DNA of 64,000 nucleotides, taken from NCBI GenBank assembly GCA_951406725.2, contig OX597828.1, forward strand, positions 9,548,001-9,612,000, given 5' to 3'. The position numbers and the translations under genes are program-made. Positions 1 to 48,385 of this stretch are shown here, piece by piece (positions within the stretch are counted from its first letter, which is position 1; the number at the start of each line of letters is the position of its first letter). The notes under the pieces were generated by a model. The model was not told the DNA's origin and did not search any database. It saw only the letters and a program-made list of their open reading frames with translations. Source of the stretch: Octopus vulgaris (taxonomy: Eukaryota).

Positions 1-780
1 CGTAACCAGACCGGCTGTCCAGTGACCCGCTACGCTGCTGGATATCATGGACTTGTCTCTGCAGTTTCCGAGCTGCAAACACATCGGTTTATTCGGATTT
101 ATCTTTTCTCCTGCCATATCCTCATCTTCTGCTAGATTGACATTCACGCTCTGAACTTCCGCTTCGTCTTCACACTATTACCGCCATGTCAAAAGTAAAC
201 ACCGGCACAGCTCTTCCTCACACCAAATCAAAACGAATGACCCTCAGGTGTTCAAGCTTCCACAGCAATGGCTCGAGAGCCAGTACGTATAATAACAGCG
301 AGGAAGGAAAGCATTGATGGATCGACTGTGCTATAAGACAGTTCCTTTCACAAGTAACATGTGCCATTGTCCACTGCTGCGGTCTAGCCACTGAAAACAT
401 GTCCGAAACCGGCTGCCAATTTGCAATATTCAATCCTATCGAATGCTTTCGAAAGACCCTCATTGATCAGGACCCCATCGATGTCGGATTTCTTTCTCCT
501 TCCATTTATGATATAGTACATGTGTTGGAGTATCTCACGGGTGGTGCTTTTAAGGATTTCGCATATTTGTGCAACTCCGACGAAACGACCTATGAGAAGC
601 GCCAGCCTCTTTGCACACAAACTCGCCAAAATTCTAAAATCTGCAATTTGCAAGATTATGAGCAGGAAAGTTTCTATAATATCCCTTTTTCAGCAGCATT
701 AACCTCCCCAAGCTCACGGAAAAAATTGCACTCGTTTTGCTGGTACTTGCAAAAGACTTGAATGCATCATCCAAACCACT
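1..780 (-). mobile_element. Tx1/L1-clade LINE ORF2 (RT) fragment, decayed, running off the window start
   Basis: Minus-strand translations give QIADFRILASLCAKRL..GLSKAFDRIEY (RT motif A region), SIHQCFPSSLLLYVLALEPLL (QGCPLSP-like) and GEKINPNK..LQLG. These are collinear with the + copy at 1850-2560. Confidence 0.85.
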
Positions 781-799: not shown

Positions 800-3700
800 T
801 CTTTTCACAGGTGTATTTCACTAATGGTTGGAATGGGAATTTGGACGCACAGAAGTACTGTGTGCGGCTAGGACAGAAAAGGGATGCAAAAGCCTCGAAA
901 ACCTACTCAGGCACTTCTAGTTGTCTGATAGGTATCGAATGGATGTCCTTGATGTGCCACTGTGAACATGGGGCAACCACAATGGTCAACCAGAAACCAT
1001 CTATATAGATTATTTGTTAGGTCAGTGGATAGGGATAGTAGGTTGTCCAGAATTTAAATTAGTCGGCTGGACATGTCGCAAATTTATGATCTTCACTGTC
1101 GAGTCAGATAGGACCCGTAGAAAGGGACCCGGTTGCTGGAAGTTAAACGTGTCCTTTCCGATACGCAAAGACTACAGAGGCCGGATTAGTGAACAAGTTA
1201 AGTGGCAGTTGACGGGGGCAATAGTCAACAACAGGTGGCGAGCCGCCCTGAAGAGGGTGATTAGTGCAGGATCGATAGCATTTAACAAAGAGTTAGCAAT
1301 TGAAAGGAATATATTAGGGAGTGAACTAGCAAGCGAAACAGAAGACGCGATTAGAAAGGGCATCGTGACCGATGTGTTATTGGCGAGAATGGCCCCCGAC
1401 CATTTCTACGAAGCAAAACATGAACGTTGTATTGTCAGAACCCAAATGTTGCCCGTGCGCTCAATCATGGAGAAAATAAAGCTGTCCGAAGTGCCTGAAC
1501 GGTGGAGACAACACGTGTAGATAAAACCACGTTCGAGTCTTTGACTCGAGACGGTACAATGCTACTCGCCTGCGAGCAGGTTTTGGAGTTCTGTTCGTAC
1601 GTGGGCAGCCAGCCGTAAGATCGGCGGCTACCATAAGGTTATGTAAAAATCGAATTCGGGAGGTGATGGACGATTGCACAAGTCGCACATCGCTCGGGTT
1701 TGGATGGTCTGCTTTATGAATTCTGTGTATTCATGCCATACTTGTTGGTGATCTCTTGGCAGATGTCTACATCAACTGGCAACTGAAGGGAAGAATTCCT
1801 AGTGGTGTTAGCCGAGGTGTGGTGACTCTGCTGAGGAAGAACGCCAACTATGGGGACTTAATACAGGACTTGCGGAAAATAACTGCTAAACACAGAGATT
1901 TTGTCGAAGATTTTTGAGAAAATGTTGGCGGTAGTTTGTTCGGGGAAGCGCAAACGTGCGCAATCTCGTGTAGGACTATCCCCAACAACCTCCTCCTTAT
2001 GCGATACATTAAAGAGAGGGCCGAGACCAAAGCTGGCTTCGGGGAGGGAGTGCTCTGCTAAATGTGGATCAGTCGAAAGCATTCAATAGGGTCAAACATC
2101 GCTACTTGGAAGCCTTCCTCAAAGCAGGCGGTTTCGAACTCGTGTTCAGATGTTGGATCGCTGCAATGCACAGCAGCACATTCAGTCGTCAAAGTACACG
2201 GTCACGTATCTGAACCGTTTGGTATCGCACGCTCGGTCCGTCGGGACTGCCCGCTGTCAACTCTTCTTTACATATCGGCAGCCGAGCCACAGCTCCGGAA
2301 GATAGAAGAGTTAAGGGGCACTCCTTTCAAACTGGGACACGGAAGGGTAGTGTCGGAATACGCAGACAACGTCACCATCATAAGGTCGGAAGCTTCCGAA
2401 GTGGAGACGGGTGACACCACCGTAAAGGAATAAGAGTCGGTTGCAGGGGCCAAAATTAACGCCAACAAATCTTTGAGTTTGAAGTTGGGCTCCCGGAAAA
2501 GCAAGTTGATGCGATCGGACGGCGTCGTGGGACGCTGGACCGGTGGACCAGTTAAACTGCTCTGGGTTTGGTTTAATCCCGACCTCCAGGTTGAGGAGAA
2601 CTGGGACGAGGTGGTCAACAGAGTGGCCAGTTTTACCCAGAAATGGGCTGAGAGGAAGGTATTTCTTAAAGGTCGGGTAAATGTGGCGAATGCCTACATC
2701 GCCTCCGTTATCATTAATCGCCTGACCGTCGTGCCTCGTCCTAATTACTGCTTGACCAAGTTGAAGCGTCTCTTATTTAAATTCTTGTGAAAGGGACGCA
2801 TCCCAATGCTCAGGCGGACAGTGTGTCGCCAGCATCCTCTAAATGACGGATTAGGTATGTTGTGGCTCTAAATATTCAGACACCCTCTTAAGCTAATACA
2901 CTTGAAATTATTTCCTGATGATGAGCGTGCGTGGGCTCCGTTTGTAATGCTTGATTCCCGCAGCTCGTCTCCTTCACCGAGACTGTGCGCCTTATACCTA
3001 GACTGCCGTCAATTGCTCACAGCACTCTAACGACAGTACAATGGGATTGATGGATGTTCATCTTTAGAAATTTATAGAGGATTAGTGACGGGGAAGTGCG
3101 CATGACATTATCAAGGAGACAGGGCGACGACGAAAAGGAACTGGCTAGTCTGATCCGGAGGACTTTCCGGGTTGGAACTATCAGGGATAATTTCCAGATG
3201 TCTTGGTCTGGCAGTGCTACTGGGGAGCGCTACCGGTAAGATATAAGCAATACATGCACGGATATGTAGCCAGACGGGTTTCTCTGAGATGCACGCAGAG
3301 TGACGAAACCGTTCAACATGCCCTCGTTCAGTATCCGGGCATTGCTGACATGTGGCTTTATGACGAACAGCAGCTGTCACGTGTGGGACGGATCCGTCTA
3401 TCGGCCGAATATGTGTTGATCATTACCGCGCTATCCTCCTTTAATCTGATAGGTAAGGCTGCTTTCCTTTGCCTGTCTGGTGGCTGTGGCGAAAGAGGAC
3501 AGATACATTCATTTTTGGTACAGCTCTCATCATTGACTTCTTGAAAAGGAAATTTGGAATGGAGAGGGAAGTGATATTCTCTAGTGAGTTTATTGAAAGG
3601 TGCATAGAAGTTACAAAAAGGGCAAGAGTGGATGTTAGCTCTCTAAGTGTAGACCTGTGAGACGGAGAGAAGGAATTGGAGAGGGCACTCGCTCTTGGTG

Positions 3701-3960
3701 TTCAGGAAAATCTCAGACAGTGGGATTTCTCGATTATCCTTAGCGGTCATCCTGTATCAGGAGGGCTACATCGCTATCGTCCTCTCCTGCCCTCCTTTTT
3801 TAACCTTTGTATACTACGTACATGTCACTTCCTTTCCATTGTATACTTTGTAAACTTACATTTTTTTCTTTTTCTTTCATTATATGTAAACCCACACAAT
3901 TTATGTGTGTCTTCGTATTGTTCCCCGCATCTTTCACACTGGTTGCAAATAAACGACGTT
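800..3960 (+). mobile_element. Tx1/L1-clade LINE, 5'-truncated ORF2 (APE remnant, RT, C-terminal Zn finger) plus 3'UTR, many stops and frameshifts
   Basis: KGPGCWKLN at the end of the endonuclease; TLLRK..DQSKAFNRV; RRDCPLSTLLY; EYADNVTII (YADD); CLRCTQSDETVQHALVQ Zn-finger-like; pyrimidine-rich 3'UTR; AATAAA at 3948-3953. Confidence 0.9.
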
Positions 3961-4989: not shown

Positions 4990-6200
4990 GAAGAAACGCT
5001 AAATCCATTGCGACTGGCGTGCTGGCGGCGAGAGTAACCCTTGACCGATTCTTCAACGCTATACACGATGATTTAATAATCAGAGCTTGAGCGCGTGATC
5101 TAAGGGGAACAAAAGGCGTTTGGTGAGCCGATTGGCTAGGGCTAATGCAGCAACGAGTCTCAGTTCACTCTTTGACGGATCGGTTGAGGCAGCTGCTTTT
5201 CAGTTCCAAGCACATATACATGGTTTTCAAATGGTACTTCACACAACTGATGGAAGTGGAGTGTGGACTTGAGACAGGGATAGACTTGACAGCTTACCTA
5301 GTTGACCTTCTACAGCTCTCGGCCCGTGATGCGGAATTCCGTGAAAAGCTGATGAGATCTGACCAAATACGAGGAGCAATATCTAGCGGCACGATGTAGT
5401 ATTTGCAGGGGCTGGATGGACGGCCCAACAATCTTTATCATCATATGCCAAATTTGCTCGGTGGACTCAGATCTACTGCAACTGAGAGCTCAGCGGAAAT
5501 ATCTCCAGTCTTGCTAGTGAGGTTTTTGATGCTGATCAGGAAGGACTCGAAAAGTGGTGGTGGCGGTGGGGGTATTTTAACAACTTCAAGCCCATGATGC
5601 TGCCAGATGTAAAGTAGAAAATTTCGTCACGATGCTATCAACATGGGAGGCGTTTGTCATCGATAGTCTTTTAGGTGAGGTAGACACATGTGCTATACCA
5701 AACAAATATGTCCACGATAAACTCTATCTCTCTTCATCAATTAAATAGTGGGCCGGTAAAGAACAAGGCATATACGGGTCTGTCACCAATTTAGATCAGT
5801 CGGAAGCATTTGATAGGGTCGACCATCAACATTTGATAGTTGTCCTGGTTTCGAGACTGTATTCAGTAACTTGATATATGCAATGTGCAGCGATATTTTC
5901 TGGGGTTCGGAATAACGGGCAACTTATTGGGACTGTTTAGTATCGGGCGCTTGGTCCATCTCTCCACGTCTATATGTACTGCCTTTAGAGCCACTATTGA
6001 AGAAGTTCTATATGGAATCCAGCGAGAACAAGGACATCTCCGCAATAGAGTCAGATGCGAAACTCATCGAGAACATCGGTCTGGCTCATTTTCAAGGATT
6101 GCAGTTCCTCTTTCACGAAGCCGGAAGCCCACAACCATGGAGCAAAGGTGTTTTATCCTCCGTGGTGGATTGGCAAATTGGCAGAATGCTTCCGAAAAAA
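4990..6200 (+). mobile_element. Third Tx1/L1-clade ORF2 fragment, more diverged
   Basis: VLAARVTLDRFF; GLDGRPNNLYHHMPNLLGG; LMLIRKDSK; NLDQSEAFDRVDHQHL; ISPRLYVLPLEPLLKK. Same motif order as the 800-3960 copy. Confidence 0.8.
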
Positions 6201-41124: not shown

Positions 41125-41161
41125 GGCACAGAAGTGGCTGTGTGGTAAGTAGCTTGCTAAC
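41125..41161 (+). mobile_element. 5' head of SINE family B, split by an insertion
   Basis: ggcacagaagtggctgtgtggtaagtagcttgctaac matches the start of the intact copy at 48015. Confidence 0.9.
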
Positions 41162-43356
41162 AGTTGCTTCTGCGCATGTGCGAGTCAGTGTTGTGTTTGG
41201 CACTGAAGCGGTGAAGACGTGCTTTTGAAACCGTCTTGAATTGAAAACTTTGGAAGCCCCATGTAAGGTAAGATTCTGTTTTCTGGGTCCAGTGGGAGTT
41301 TTTGTTGAGAATTGTTTTTTACAGGCAGGAAGTCCTACTGGATTCAGAATTCTGATTCTGCCGACATGTGGCAAATATATTTTTCTCGCTGAGAAAATTG
41401 GGGGGGGGGGGGCGTATCCGTCTTCGATAAATTGAGTGAATATTTTTCTCACGTAATTGTGAGAATTGTATTGTGCTGTGAAGAACTTTTATGAATTGTG
41501 AAAACTACTATATAGGGGAGTATTTTGCCTCCGAAGTTTGAACAATTTTTACCAATTTTACACCAATTTTTGTGGAAGTTGTGCGTTCCTGGTTCAATTT
41601 AGGCCGGGAGTACCAAATGGCCAGAAGGTTTTTGCTGTGTTATTGACTTTCTTTTTAACTTTATTTGACTTTCCTTTTAACTTTATTTGACTCTCTCCTT
41701 TTTTCACTGTGACTTTCTTCGGATTTCCTTTTCCTCCCGTTTTTTAGTTTTATTCTGAATACATTTAAAAAAACAAAAAAAAAAAAAACATGGCAATGAA
41801 AATTAACAAACTTTTGGAATGGGAGATCATACCGCCTAAAAAGTGGTTAAAAGACCGTGAAGATAGGACGGTGGTGTTGAGAACCTACTCCAAGGCACTC
41901 GACAACATCGCCCTATTCAAAAAGACGGCAATTGAAATGGAGTTGGAAGAGTATCTGCCAACAATTAAATTCATTTCCAAGGGTGTCAAATATGCAACGG
42001 TGTGGTTGCTATTTGACACCCCTGAAGAGGCTTGCAAATTTGATAGCAAACCCCTGGAGGGTAAGGAAATCTTATTCCTGCCCACGTACAAAAAAAGAAA
42101 TTAATGAAAGCTTGAATTTGCGGGCTGCCACCCGACATAGAACCCGAGTGGATAGAGGAGACTATCCGCCGGGGTCTGGGTGGCAGCGAAACTAAGCTCC
42201 TTAATGTAAAAGTTCTTCCTGCGGCTGCTTGGGTTGGGTCAAAAGCAATTTTGACCCTGTGGACCCAATCAGCCAACCTGGTTCTTCCAGATTTTTTTAA
42301 AATGGCCGGGTGCAGGTACCCGGTGATGCTTGAGGGTCGCCCCCCTAAGTGTCATCGGTGCTTGGAGTCCGTCCACATAAAGAAGAACTGTCCCCGGGAA
42401 CAAAATAGGATCCCGGAACAGTTAAGTAAAACCCTTCTAGAAGAGGGAATGATAACGGCCGAGAAAGCAGAGGACTCCTCAAACAGAGGCCGAAAGAGGA
42501 AGGTGAGCAACAATGGGTGCTCACCAAAGGATAATAGGGATGAGGAGAGGAAGGCGAATCTTCCAGCCACGGAGGAGACGCACCCTCCCTCAGTTGAAAA
42601 GGGAAAAAAAGAAAAAGAGGAAGAAAAACGGGACATTACCGGCTGTCAGTGTAGCACCGGAATGTCCCGGAACTACGTCGGTTGGGGTTGTGCCACCGAC
42701 AAGAGAAGGAATACCGTTGGCGGGAACTGTGCCGCCAACGAAAGAACTGAACGTATTGGTCCTCTTCTATAGAGGAGGAGAAATTGAAAAAGTGATGGAA
42801 GAGCACTACAAGGGTGCACCTTTAGCCTTCACACAGGACCCCGAATGGCCTCCGCAGGTAGCTGTGGAGGCCGTGGCGTTCGACGTGACGCTTGGGCTAA
42901 AGGAGCTCAATGAAGATTATAACTTGGTCCCGGGCGACGCCAACTCGGAACTTGATTACGTTCTGAGGGAGGCGTGGTTGATGGTGGAGGGCGCGGGCAC
43001 AAGCTATTTCGAGGATGATATGTAATTATTGAACTGTTATTATTAGTAATGGACTGCTAAGTCCAAAAATTGAAAAATTGTAATAGGATTAATACCTCGT
43101 TTTGTGTTTATTTTTTATTAATAATGGACTGCTAGGTCCAAAAATTGGAAAAATTGTAAGAGGTTTAATACCTCATTTTGTGTTTATCTTTAAAAAGAAC
43201 AATGTTTTAGAGAAGCGAAAGTCGGCGGGCGCTTTTTGTCTTCTCCCATCCTTATCATCTTTGTTTCATTATCATTCACTTCATTAATGTCCTCGTCCAG
43301 CCCGCAAAGCTAACTTAATCTGTGTACTGCCTTTATGGCAAATGTTTTGAAATAAA
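41162..43356 (+). mobile_element. ORF1-only non-autonomous Tx1/L1-type retroelement (HAL1-like)
   Basis: ~630-bp 5'UTR, ORF1 at 41790-43025, ~330-bp 3'UTR, AATAAA at 43351-56, then a duplicated target. No ORF2 sequence seen. Confidence 0.8.
41790..43025 (+). pseudogene. LINE ORF1 (gag-like; RRM-like region plus CCHC knuckle), disrupted
   Basis: MAMKINKLLEW..; K(A)*ICGLPPDIEPEW; EGRPPKCHRCLESVHIKKNCP. Two frameshifts in A-runs (~42090, ~42605) and one TGA at ~42113. Confidence 0.85.
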
Positions 43357-43730
43357 GTAGCTTACTTACCAACCACATGGTTCTGGGTTCAGTCATACTG
43401 TGTGGCACCTTGGGCAAGTGTCTTCTACTATAGCCTCGGGCCGACCAAAGGCTTGTGAGTTGATTTGGTAGACGGTAACTGAAAGAAGCCCGTCGTATAT
43501 ATGTATATATATGTGTGTGTGTGTTTGTGCGTCACTGTTTGTCCCACAACCCAAAAATCGCTTCACAACCGATGCTGGTGTGTTTACGTCCCCGTAACTT
43601 AGCGGTTCGGCAAAAGAGAGCGATAGAATAAGTACTACGCTTACAAAGAATAAGTCCTGGGGTCGATTTGCTCCGCTAAAGGCGGTGCTCCAGCATGGCC
43701 GCAGTCAAATGACTGAAACAAGTAAAAGAG
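43357..43730 (+). mobile_element. Remainder of the split SINE family B
   Basis: gtagcttacttaccaaccacatggttctgggttcagtc..tggcaccttgggcaagtgtcttct (CORE-like), collinear with 48015-48385. Confidence 0.9.
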
Positions 43731-48014: not shown

Positions 48015-48385
48015 GGCGCAGGAGTGGCTGTGTGGTAAGTAGCTTGCTAACCAACCACATGGTTCCGGGTTCAGTCCCACTGCGTGGCATCTTGGGCAAG
48101 TGTCTTCTGCTATAGCCCCGGGTCGACCAATGCCTTGTGAGTGGATTTGGTAGACGGAAACTGAAAGAAGCCTGTCGTATATATGTATATATATATGTGT
48201 GTGTGTGTGTTTATCCCCCTAGCATTGCTTCACAACCGATGCTTGTGTGTTTGCGTTCCCGTCACTTAGCGGTTCGGCAAAAGAGACCAATAGAATAAGT
48301 ACTGGGCTTACAAAGAATAAGTCCCGGGGTCGATTTGCTAGACCAAAGGCGGTGCTCCAGCACTGAAACAAGTAAAAGAATAAAA
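48015..48385 (+). mobile_element. tRNA-derived SINE family B (CORE-like), intact
   Basis: A box gtggctgtgtggtaag, B box gggttcagtccc, tggcatcttgggcaagtgtcttct, internal (TA)(TG) tract. Confidence 0.92.

What the first reader, a model, noticed from the sequence alone, without database searches (positions are those of the whole stretch)
41125..43380. ORF1-only (HAL1-like) Tx1-type retroelement inserted between the A and B boxes of a SINE
Seen: the SINE B head stops at 41161 and resumes at 43357. The target AAGTAGCTTGCTAAC (41147-61) is repeated as AAGTAGCTTACTTAC (43355-69), 13/15 identical. Between them are a 5'UTR starting AGTTGC..CAGTGTTGTG..GAAGACGTG, a single ~410-aa ORF1 (RRM-like plus CCHC), a short 3'UTR and AATAAA directly at the junction. 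Both ends look complete, yet there is no endonuclease or RT. Established: half-L1 (HAL1) elements encode only ORF1p, and several Tx1 families target RNA genes or other repeats. Inference: a non-autonomous ORF1-only family in a cephalopod, possibly targeting the tRNA-derived head of a high-copy SINE, i.e. a parasite of a parasite mobilised in trans by a Tx1 LINE.
Basis: partly seen in the sequence, partly recalled or inferred. Interest (0 to 1): 0.75.

Follow-up and report, generated by a model that had tools for sequence, protein, structure and literature searches.

The report
Octopus retroelement that targets a SINE
A decayed 2.2-kb LINE-type jumping gene that carries only the RNA-binding ORF1 gene sits at one exact spot inside an octopus SINE, and two further copies in other octopus genomes sit at that same spot, so it is a mobile element that lands specifically in another mobile element; whether it belongs to a true ORF1-only family could not be tested.

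Summary
The structure is real. A tRNA-derived octopus SINE is split after nt 37 (41161) and resumes at nt 23 (43355). This gives a 15-bp target duplication (13/15 identical) around a 2193-bp insert with no LTRs, TIRs, endonuclease or RT.

The "single ~410-aa ORF1" is not intact. It survives as three pieces with two frameshifts and one in-frame stop. It encodes two RRM-like domains and a CCHC knuckle (Type I ORF1p).

The new result is target specificity:
- An O. sinensis copy (about 73% identical) has the same 5' end abutting the same SINE head.
- An O. bimaculoides SINE carries a 5'-truncated ~135-bp copy with the identical 3' junction (GAAATAA|AGTAGCTT).

A distant ORF1 paralog in octopus belongs to an ORF1-APE-RT-zfRVT LINE flanked on both sides by (ATT)n, a behaviour typical of Tx1-clade elements.

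Not established:
- Tx1 membership, because this family has no RT to place.
- The autonomous partner.
- Whether ORF1-only is a family trait or a one-off deletion. Only the window copy spans ORF1 to the 3' end, and no octopus genome could be searched.

Verdict: a new member of a known kind (target-specific L1/Tx1-like LINE derivatives). The HAL1-like reading is plausible but unproven.

The parts
41125..41161 (+). 5' part of the host SINE (nt 1-37), including the A box TGGCTGTGTGG at 41135-41145
   Evidence: BLASTN against the intact SINE, 94.6%. A-box position.
41147..41161 (+). Left copy of the 15-bp target-site duplication, AAGTAGCTTGCTAAC
   Evidence: repeat family D6.
41162..41789 (+). 5'UTR of the retroelement (628 bp). 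It has 27 T>=4 runs in the whole insert (the first at 41223), a G13 run at about 41400, and an A-run just before the ATG.
   Evidence: Homologous along its length to L001 9487-10000, starting directly at the SINE junction. T-runs.
41790..42101 (+). ORF1 piece A (104 codons): N-terminus and the first RRM-like domain (about 41868-42083)
   Evidence: 71% aa identity to P0001 residues 1-100. AF2 beta-alpha-beta-beta-alpha-beta fold, pLDDT 74-90. Foldseek finds tandem-RRM proteins.
42085..42115 (+). Damaged stretch: a single-base frameshift near 42089 and an in-frame stop at 42113-42115
   Evidence: DNA alignment with the O. sinensis copy. Translations.
42116..42769 (+). ORF1 piece B (218 codons in a shifted frame): second RRM-like domain (to about 42331), CCHC knuckle, and a Lys/Glu-rich linker. 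The true frame changes again in the A-run at about 42600-42640.
   Evidence: phmmer E=6.7e-54 to P0001. Structure. Alignment.
42350..42391 (+). CX2CX4HX4C zinc knuckle (CHRCLESVHIKKNC)
   Evidence: Pfam zf-CCHC matches at the homologous position in P0004 (22.0 bits, above threshold) and P0003. Weak profile hits to nucleocapsid knuckles.
42642..43025 (+). ORF1 piece C (original frame) with its stop codon. 42642-42790 is homologous to L001. 42791-43022 is 77 open codons (GC 0.56) with no homolog found anywhere.
43026..43354 (+). 3'UTR (329 bp, GC 0.32). It contains a 76-bp tandem duplication at 43040-43191.
43213..43354 (+). Conserved 3'-terminal region of the family, with the blocks TCGGCGGGCG, TTGTCTTCTCCCAT, TCATTAATGTC, GTCCAGCC, TCTGTGTACTGCCTTTATGGCAAAT and TGAAATAA. 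AATAAA lies at 43351-43356.
   Evidence: 75.8% identical to the 5'-truncated copy in L003 7200-7075 (-), with the same junction to the SINE.
43355..43369 (+). Right copy of the target-site duplication, AAGTAGCTTACTTAC
43355..43729 (+). 3' part of the host SINE (nt 23 to the end), including the B box GGTTCAGTC at 43386
   Evidence: BLASTN 85.3% over nt 23-348. The tail is read.

Best explanation
The insert (41162-43354) is an old, now dead copy of a target-site-specific non-LTR (LINE-type) retroelement family of octopuses.

How it integrated:
- The family integrates by target-primed reverse transcription at one defined position of the abundant tRNA-derived octopus SINE.
- The priming (bottom-strand) nick falls between SINE nt 22 and 23 (GGT|AAGTAGC), in the stretch between the Pol III A and B boxes. 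This is shown by the identical 3' junction in two copies.
- The second nick falls 3-15 bp downstream. This is shown by a 15-bp duplication here and about 3-6 bp in the O. bimaculoides copy.
- The insertion splits the SINE promoter.

What it encodes:
- A Type I ORF1p (two RRM-like domains, one CCHC knuckle, a basic linker and a C-terminal tail), presumably an RNA chaperone or packaging protein for its own transcript.
- No endonuclease or RT.

Inferred steps:
- Transcription by Pol II from the 628-bp 5'UTR. The evidence is the AATAAA at the 3' end and 27 Pol III terminator-like T-runs in the insert.
- Recognition of the block-conserved terminal ~140 nt by the RT of an autonomous relative whose APE endonuclease is specific for the SINE.
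- Mobilisation of this ORF2-less RNA in trans, in the manner of HAL1.

My sub-probabilities:
- LINE-type, SINE-site-specific insertion: about 0.9.
- L1/Tx1-group affiliation: about 0.7.
- ORF2 already absent when this copy inserted: about 0.55.
For: Insertion anatomy:
- The SINE is split with a 15-bp duplication, and the rejoined empty site is a complete SINE.
- There are no LTRs or TIRs.

Recurrence at the same site in three octopus genomes:
- L001 (O. sinensis) has the SINE head up to about nt 34 directly in front of the homologous 5'UTR. Homology to the window starts exactly at the SINE's first base.
- L003 (O. bimaculoides) has a SINE whose head stops at about nt 26-28 and resumes at nt 23 around a ~135-bp 5'-truncated copy with the identical 3' junction.
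- In the 132 kb of octopus DNA held, the family's 3' end occurs only twice, both times at this SINE position.

Independent insertion rather than co-amplification:
- The insert 3' ends are more diverged (76%) than their host SINEs (89%), Fisher p=4e-4.
- The 5' junctions differ between copies.
- The 27 T>=4 runs would stop Pol III transcription of the SINE-plus-insert unit.

ORF1 type:
- Two RRM folds plus zf-CCHC.
- The literature links Type I ORF1p in non-mammalian animals to Tx1 (PMC5203782).

Relatives:
- All four homologs among 1.84 billion cluster representatives are from Octopus.
- The paralog P0002 heads an ORF1-APE-RT-zfRVT LINE flanked by (ATT)n on both sides.
- Target-specific APE LINEs belong to the Tx1 and R1 clades (PMC4640811). 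Tx1 families often target other transposons (PMC4494074).
- L1-Tx1 LINEs are recently active in O. vulgaris (PMC13282606).

ORF2-less organisation:
- ORF1 keeps its own stop codon.
- The 329-bp 3'UTR holds no ORF2 remnant.
- The O. sinensis copy has no APE or RT within 10 kb downstream.
Against: - Only the window copy spans ORF1 to the 3' end, so ORF1-only is an n=1 observation. That copy was selected for looking odd.
- No autonomous partner sharing the 3' end was found.
- There is no RT in the family, so clade membership is indirect. The LINE used as the relative shares only about 25% ORF1 identity.
- The last 77 codons (42791-43022) have no homolog, and homology with L001 stops exactly there. 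A fusion with something else cannot be excluded.
- Their resemblance to other ORF1 tails is not significant (p=0.09-0.2).
- L001 is rearranged downstream, so its lack of ORF2 is weak evidence.
- Site specificity rests on three copies. Two of them were found through the element itself.
- The 3'-end stems show no covariation.
Confidence: 0.55

Rival explanations
1. Same SINE-specific LINE family, but this copy is a one-off. Either a full-length autonomous element (ORF1+ORF2, about 6 kb) inserted here and later lost ORF2 by an internal deletion, or a single aberrantly processed RNA (spliced or prematurely polyadenylated) was retrotransposed once. In that case there is no amplifying ORF1-only family.
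For: - Only one copy spans the region.
- The copy is old and already carries three ORF lesions, a 76-bp duplication and 2/15 mismatches in the target duplication, so further rearrangement is plausible.
- Homology with L001 ends at about 42790, and the following 77 codons are orphan sequence that could lie beyond a deletion junction.
- Only one annotated protein of this family exists in public proteomes.
Against: - A random deletion would rarely leave ORF1 with an open tail and its stop codon, remove every detectable trace of a ~3.7-kb ORF2, and keep the 3' end.
- The break in homology at 42790 is more simply explained by L001, which runs into microsatellite-like sequence there.
- L001 also has no ORF2 within 10 kb.
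Confidence: 0.35
2. There is no target specificity. An element inserted once into a SINE master copy, and the SINE-plus-insert unit (or the SINE head as part of the element) was then copied around. The shared junctions would be inherited, not re-created.
For: - All three copies have the same orientation and neighbouring junctions.
- The ~135-bp L003 insert has no T>=4 run, so a Pol III transcript could in principle pass through it.
Against: - The 5' junctions differ: SINE nt 37, about 34 and about 26-28, joined to full-length, full-length and 5'-truncated elements.
- The host SINEs are significantly less diverged than the inserts.
- Pol III would terminate 62 nt into the 2.2-kb insert.
- Flanks outside the SINE are unrelated.
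- The rejoined empty site is an ordinary full SINE.
Confidence: 0.05
3. A processed pseudogene (retrocopy) of a host or domesticated ORF1-derived gene, inserted at random by some LINE.
For: - It has an mRNA-like layout: 5'UTR, ORF, 3'UTR and AATAAA.
- The O. sinensis homolog is annotated as a gene, LOC115225585.
Against: - There is no poly(A) tail at the junction.
- The family recurs at the same SINE nucleotide in three genomes.
- Both ORF-bearing copies are frameshifted, and P0001 has lost the first Cys of the knuckle.
Confidence: 0.03

Closest known systems
Target-specific Tx1-clade LINEs (Tx1L in the piggyBac element Tx1D; Tx1-Mar in Mariner-N4_AMi; Keno in U2 snRNA genes; Kibi/Koshi in (TC)n/(TTC)n) - PMC4494074, PMC4640811
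   Same: - Precise, orientation-specific insertion into a multicopy sequence, including other transposons.
- A constant 3' junction with variable 5' junction and truncation.
- No long poly(A) tail.
- Type I (RRM + CCHC) ORF1.
- The nearest LINE found here has APE + RT + zf-RVT and is flanked by a microsatellite.
   Different: - The target is the tRNA-like head of a SINE. No report of this was found in the searchable literature.
- This copy has no ORF2.
- RT-based membership cannot be tested.
HAL1 (half-L1) of mammals - PMC5753468, citing Smit 1999 and Bao & Jurka 2010
   Same: A LINE-derived element that encodes only ORF1p and must rely on ORF2p supplied in trans.
   Different: - HAL1 is a documented multi-copy family of the mammalian L1 clade.
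- From my own knowledge, not tested here: it has a Type II (Transposase_22) ORF1, a poly(A) tail and no sequence-specific target.
- Here the ORF1 is Type I and the insertion is site-specific.
- Family status here rests on one copy.
SINEU / Tx1-Mar partnership in crocodilians - PMC4494074
   Same: A non-autonomous retroelement that shares the target preference of an autonomous Tx1 partner, where the target is another transposon.
   Different: SINEU elements are short, non-coding and headed by snRNA sequence. The octopus element is 2.2 kb, encodes ORF1p, and its partner is unknown.
Octopus (ATT)n-flanked LINE (L002 9770-15345; window 828-3960)
   Same: - Homologous ORF1 architecture: an MAMK start, RRM, RRM and CCHC.
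- An A-rich stretch before the ATG.
- A 3' end of the form GC(A/C)AATAAA with no poly(A) tail.
- Sequence-specific flanks.
   Different: - Only about 25% ORF1 identity.
- No detectable similarity in the UTRs.
- A different target.
- It carries ORF2.
R2/R1 rDNA-specific LINEs
   Same: The logic of a safe-haven target, and the pattern of identical 3' junctions with ragged 5' junctions.
   Different: R2 uses a restriction-like endonuclease and a single ORF. The targets are rRNA genes rather than a SINE (PMC4640811).

Membership tests
LINE-type (TPRT) retroelement insertion | Target-site duplication flanking the insert, with an empty site that can be reconstituted | tested here: met
   A 15-bp duplication, 13/15 identical. 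The joined flanks give a full SINE 88-91% identical to intact copies.
LINE-type (TPRT) retroelement insertion | No LTRs or terminal inverted repeats | tested here: met
   The repeat finder reports only the target duplication at the ends.
LINE-type (TPRT) retroelement insertion | 5'-truncated copies that share the 3' end | tested here: met
   L003 7200-7063 (-) holds only the last ~135 bp. This is a single example.
Target-site-specific non-LTR retrotransposon | Independent copies at the same nucleotide of the same target, in the same orientation | tested here: met
   The 3' junction GAAATAA|AGTAGCTT is identical in the window and L003. The 5' junctions lie at SINE nt 37, about 34 and about 26-28 in the window, L001 and L003. 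No copy of the 3' end outside a SINE occurs in 132 kb. This is n=3 with no genome-wide census.
Tx1 clade (L1 group) of non-LTR retrotransposons | RT domain groups with Tx1 in an RT phylogeny | not testable with these tools
   This family shows no RT, and the partner was not found. No reference RT set was available.
Tx1 clade (L1 group) of non-LTR retrotransposons | APE-type endonuclease in ORF2 | tested here: not met
   There is no APE in the window element. APE (Exo_endo_phos) is present only in the distant relative L002. The element is therefore filed as a derivative, not as an autonomous member.
Tx1 clade (L1 group) of non-LTR retrotransposons | Type I ORF1p (RRM plus CCHC) | tested here: met
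   The AF2 model shows two beta-alpha-beta-beta-alpha-beta domains. Foldseek top hits are tandem-RRM proteins (E 1e-5 to 1e-3). The CX2CX4HX4C motif lies at 42350-42391, and zf-CCHC matches the homologs. Pfam RRM models themselves do not match.
HAL1-like non-autonomous ORF1-only family | Encodes ORF1 only, between LINE-type 5' and 3' ends | tested here: met
   The window copy has a 5' end shared with L001, a 3' end shared with L003, an ORF1 with its own stop codon and no ORF2. The ORF is degenerate.
HAL1-like non-autonomous ORF1-only family | Several copies share the same ORF1/3'UTR junction, showing amplification as such | not testable with these tools
   No octopus genome could be searched. 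Protein and DNA scans gave no further copies.
HAL1-like non-autonomous ORF1-only family | An autonomous parent LINE with matching 5' and 3' ends | tested here: inconclusive
   The LINEs in the window, L001 and L002 share no UTR similarity with the insert beyond a GC(A/C)AAT(AAA) 3' motif.
HAL1 proper (mammalian L1 derivative) | Transposase_22 (Type II) ORF1 | tested here: not met
   There is no Transposase_22 hit. The architecture is Type I. The element is analogous to HAL1, not a member.
tRNA-derived SINE (the target) | Internal Pol III A and B boxes in a tRNA-like head; many dispersed copies | tested here: met
   The A box TGGCTGTGTGG is at nt 11 and the B box GGTTCAGTCCC at nt 54. There are at least 8 copies in 132 kb. 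These were read by eye against the consensus boxes.
tRNA-derived SINE (the target) | Head recognisable as a tRNA by tRNA detectors | tested here: not met
   ARAGORN finds none, and Rfam at E<=1 finds no tRNA match. The tRNA origin rests on the literature for octopus SINEs (Ohshima & Okada 1994, cited in PMC4824008).

The most novel reading that the evidence does not exclude
A genuine, amplifying ORF1-only (HAL1-like) family outside mammals that is also sequence-specific. It would borrow the ORF2p of a not-yet-identified Tx1-like LINE whose endonuclease recognises the A-box/B-box spacer of the commonest octopus SINE. Each insertion would disable a SINE promoter. That would make three layers of parasitism: a non-autonomous element using a LINE's machinery to insert into a SINE.
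Probability: 0.3. Interest if true: 0.65.

Novelty: new member of a known kind. Interest (0 to 1): 0.5.

Why it matters
- SINEs make up about 8-12% of octopus genomes (PMC13282606). An element that lands only in the SINE head therefore has hundreds of thousands of harmless landing sites. Each hit separates the A and B boxes and should silence that SINE copy. This is a clear case of one transposon using, and damaging, another.
- It extends the list of targets of sequence-specific APE-type LINEs to a tRNA-derived SINE in a mollusc.
- If the ORF1-only organisation is a family trait, half-LINE parasites would have arisen outside mammalian L1, and in a site-specific lineage.
- For annotation: O. 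sinensis LOC115225585 and three other "uncharacterized" or "CCHC-type domain-containing" octopus proteins are ORF1 remnants of LINEs, not host genes.

Tried and rejected
- Pfam on the three ORF pieces gave nothing.
- Word-index protein searches with piece A, piece B and P0001 found no new relatives.
- Exact look-ups of two window ORFs found nothing on record.
- DNA pattern scans with the 3'-end 20-mer, the junction 21-mer and the SINE head gave only chance hits: a bacterial contig, an unrelated eukaryotic contig and a gammaproteobacterial MAG. They covered metagenome, bacterial-genome and viral collections. No octopus DNA is in those collections.
- ARAGORN and Rfam did not recognise the SINE head as a tRNA.
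- A profile of the ORF1 alignment against PDB sequences gave only weak CCHC-knuckle hits and no L1 ORF1p.
- AF2 of the C-terminal 127 residues as a single sequence gave pLDDT 33, which is unusable, so no fold search was run on it.
- The by-eye resemblance of the ORF1 C-terminal tail to the tails of the L002 and L003 ORF1s was not significant against shuffles. I rejected it as evidence.
- RNAalifold on the two 3' ends predicted stems with no covariation, which is uninformative.
- I looked for the rest of the L001 copy or an ORF2 downstream and found none.
- I considered and rejected that the A-run before the ATG marks a junction of two elements. The 5'UTR is homologous to L001 throughout, and L002 also has an A-rich stretch before the same MAMK start.
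- L002 ORF2 segments against PDB gave only a weak hit to human L1 ORF2p (E=0.004) and no APE hit. This is too weak to assign a clade.
Full report
OBSERVATION

The region was read directly. An intact copy of the same SINE lies at 48015-48372. BLASTN of that copy places SINE nt 1-37 at 41125-41161 and nt 23-348 at 43355-43695. The SINE is therefore interrupted, and 15 nt (nt 23-37) are present on both sides: AAGTAGCTTGCTAAC and AAGTAGCTTACTTAC, 13/15 identical.

A match of at least 13/15 to this 15-mer occurs only at these two places and in the intact SINE. Joining the flanks in a script yields a complete SINE 88-91% identical to uninterrupted copies from the window and from O. bimaculoides. The A box (nt 11) and B box (nt 54) fall on opposite sides of the insert.

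The 2193-bp insert is unique in the window. Its only terminal repeat is the duplication, with no LTRs or TIRs. The quoted 5' strings are present, and AATAAA overlaps the 3' junction.

One statement fails. There is no single ~410-aa ORF. The coding region survives as three stop-free pieces in two frames. Alignment with the O. sinensis copy shows a single-base frameshift near 42089, an in-frame stop at 42113-42115, and another frameshift in the A-rich run around 42600-42640. The ancestral ORF would have been about 410 codons.

WHAT THE PROTEIN IS

Pfam finds nothing in the three pieces. The word-index searches also found nothing.

An exhaustive phmmer search with piece B against 1.84 billion cluster representatives found four proteins, all from Octopus:
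- P0001 (O. sinensis LOC115225585, 59% identity), which covers pieces A and B.
- Three distant paralogs (28-31% identity) from O. sinensis and O. bimaculoides.

An AlphaFold model of P0001 was built with the small family alignment. Its mean pLDDT is 61, and the N-terminal domain reaches 74-90. It has two consecutive beta-alpha-beta-beta-alpha-beta domains. The top Foldseek matches in the PDB are all tandem-RRM proteins (NONO/SFPQ, Npl3, Pub1, hnRNP A1 UP1), with E from 1e-5 to 1e-3.

A CX2CX4HX4C knuckle follows at 42350-42391. Pfam zf-CCHC matches the homologous position in the paralogs, and P0004 scores above threshold. This is a Type I ORF1p as defined by Khazina and Weichenrieder. Ivancevic et al. 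describe this type in non-mammalian animals as consistent with the Tx1 clade (PMC5203782).

The last 77 codons (42791-43022) are open and GC-rich (0.56 against 0.32 for the 3'UTR). They have no detectable relative, and their single-sequence model is unusable.

THE KEY NEW EVIDENCE: OTHER COPIES

The locus of P0001 (L001, O. sinensis chromosome CM016886.1) aligns with the window from the first base of the SINE head. The alignment runs through the whole 5'UTR and into the ORF, at about 73% identity. The sequence upstream of the SINE is unrelated.

In L001 the SINE head runs to about nt 34 and is followed directly by the homologous 5'UTR. This second full-length 5' end therefore sits at the same place in another SINE copy. 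L001 loses homology at the point corresponding to window 42790 and runs into microsatellite-like sequence. No remainder and no APE or RT lie within 10 kb downstream.

L003 (O. bimaculoides) was fetched for an unrelated paralog. By chance it contains a SINE on the minus strand (7222-6730). Its head stops at about nt 26-28 and resumes at nt 23 around a ~135-bp insert. That insert is 76% identical to the last 140 bp of the window element, and its 3' junction is identical...CTGTGTACTGCCTTTATGGCAAAT...TGAAATAA|AGTAGCTT.

This is the classic LINE signature. The 3' junction is constant because it marks the priming nick. The 5' ends are ragged, here with 5' truncation and AAG microhomology. In the 132 kb of octopus DNA available, the family's 3' end occurs only at these two SINE sites.

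WHY CO-AMPLIFICATION IS UNLIKELY

Co-amplification of a SINE-plus-insert unit is unlikely for four reasons:
- The 5' junctions differ between copies.
- The host SINEs are significantly more alike (89%) than the inserts (76%), Fisher p=4e-4.
- The 2.2-kb insert has 27 runs of four or more T, the first 62 nt in, which would stop Pol III.
- The flanks outside the SINE are unrelated.

AFFILIATION

The paralog P0002 (L002) is the first ORF of a degenerate LINE. Its second ORF has Exo_endo_phos, an RT with the YADD motif, and zf-RVT. That element is flanked on both sides by long (ATT)n tracts and ends GGCCAATAAAAAGAATTA with no poly(A) tail.

A second copy of that kind lies in the window at 828-3960. 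It ends GCAAATAAACGACG followed by (TTA)n.

Sequence-specific APE-type LINEs are known from the Tx1 and R1 clades (PMC4640811). Many Tx1 families target microsatellites or other transposons (PMC4494074). L1-Tx1 LINEs are among the recently active families in O. vulgaris (PMC13282606).

Taken together, this makes an L1/Tx1-type origin likely. It remains indirect. The relative shares only about 25% ORF1 identity, no UTR similarity was found, and the family itself provides no RT to place.

MECHANISM

Shown:
- Integration at SINE nt 22/23 in the SINE's orientation.
- A variable second nick, giving a duplication of 15 bp in the window and about 3-6 bp in L003.
- 5' truncation in one copy.
- No poly(A) tail.

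Inferred:
- Pol II transcription from the 5'UTR.
- ORF1p binding to its own RNA.
- Recognition of the block-conserved terminal ~140 nt by a partner RT. The predicted stems are conserved but show no covariation.
- Cleavage by a SINE-specific APE supplied in trans.

The insertion separates the A and B boxes by 2.2 kb and should inactivate the SINE copy.

WHAT REMAINS OPEN

It is open whether ORF1-only is a family trait (HAL1-like; HAL1 definition in PMC5753468) or a private deletion or aberrant RNA.

In favour of an ORF2-less RNA:
- ORF1 keeps an open tail and its own stop codon.
- No trace of ORF2 is left.
- L001 also lacks ORF2 nearby.

Against:
- It is an n=1 observation.
- The tail is orphan sequence.
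- The copy was picked because it looked unusual.

I put about 0.55 on ORF2 being already absent at insertion.

No octopus genome could be searched with the tools. The metagenome, bacterial-genome and viral scans gave only chance matches. Exact look-ups of window ORFs found nothing.

COMPARISON AND NOVELTY

The element behaves like a target-specific Tx1-type LINE derivative. Its closest functional analogy is the SINEU/Tx1-Mar pair, in which a non-autonomous element shares its partner's transposon target.

It is not a member of HAL1 proper, since it has no Transposase_22 and lies outside the mammalian L1 lineage. It cannot be filed as an autonomous Tx1 element, since it has no APE or RT.

I found no report of a SINE-head-specific LINE in cephalopods in the searchable literature. 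Repbase could not be consulted.

I rate it a new member of a known kind with moderate interest. Interest would be higher if the census confirms an amplifying ORF1-only, site-specific family.

Noticed in passing
window 828-3960 (+); L002 9700-15370: A 5'-truncated L1/Tx1-like LINE with an APE C-terminus, RT and a zf-RVT-type C-terminus, 48-58% aa identical to the L002 LINE. It ends GCAAATAAACGACG followed by (TTA)n. The L002 copy is flanked by (ATT)n on both sides. This looks like a microsatellite-specific LINE family in octopus.
   Followed up: partly
window 40-334 (-), 5007-6077 (+); L001 2-376 (+): Further RT and ORF2 C-terminal fragments of related LINEs (tblastn). This LINE group is common in these octopus genomes.
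   Followed up: no
L002 11853-11861 versus window 43334-43342 and L003 7076-7084 (-): The ORF2 start of the L002 LINE reads ATGGCAAAT (MAN...). The same 9-mer sits about 12 nt before the 3' end of the SINE-specific element in both the window and L003. It may be chance. It could also hint that the ORF1-only 3' end derives from a premature polyadenylation site at the start of ORF2. Unexplained.
   Followed up: no
L001 10001-10846: O. sinensis LOC115225585 (XP_029652367-9), annotated as a protein-coding gene, is a frameshifted and 3'-rearranged ORF1 remnant of this retroelement. The first Cys of its zinc knuckle is replaced by Phe. P0002-P0004 are likewise LINE ORF1 remnants annotated as uncharacterized or CCHC-domain proteins.
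   Followed up: partly
window 43040-43191: A 76-bp tandem duplication (2 copies, 90% identical) inside the 3'UTR of the element.
   Followed up: no
window 41400-41413 and 41767-41788: A G13 homopolymer in the 5'UTR and a 22-nt A-rich run directly before the ORF1 ATG. The A-run is absent from the O. sinensis copy, but an A-rich stretch also precedes the ATG in the L002 LINE.
   Followed up: partly
L001 11511-11825 and 13683-13985: Two direct repeats about 2.2 kb apart encode the same peptide stretch (GNV.SSPPSSNLPLRLDSSCDRTYIHQALTTS). They lie just downstream of the truncated O. sinensis copy. This may be an LTR-type element and part of the rearrangement that removed the copy's 3' half.
   Followed up: no
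L005 1270-1300 (JGI metagenome contig Ga0126325_10040517): A eukaryote-like contig carries TGTACTGCCTTTATGGCAAATAAAC, 20+ nt identical to the element's 3'-terminal block and followed by AATAAA. About two chance hits are expected for a 20-mer in that collection, so it is probably coincidence. It could instead be a related LINE 3' end from another invertebrate.
   Followed up: partly
window 48015-48372 (+); 37091-36927 (-): One intact and one degenerate copy of the same SINE, both uninterrupted at nt 22/23. In the unbiased sample, 1 of 6 SINE heads carried the insertion, which hints at a high copy number of 5'-truncated insertions.
   Followed up: partly
window 41162-41180 versus L001 9477-9497: The element's first bases (AGTTGCTTC) resemble SINE nt 27-35 (AGCTTGCTT). 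In L001 the two are merged. This is either 5' microhomology joining or a remnant of target sequence carried at the element's 5' end.
   Followed up: no
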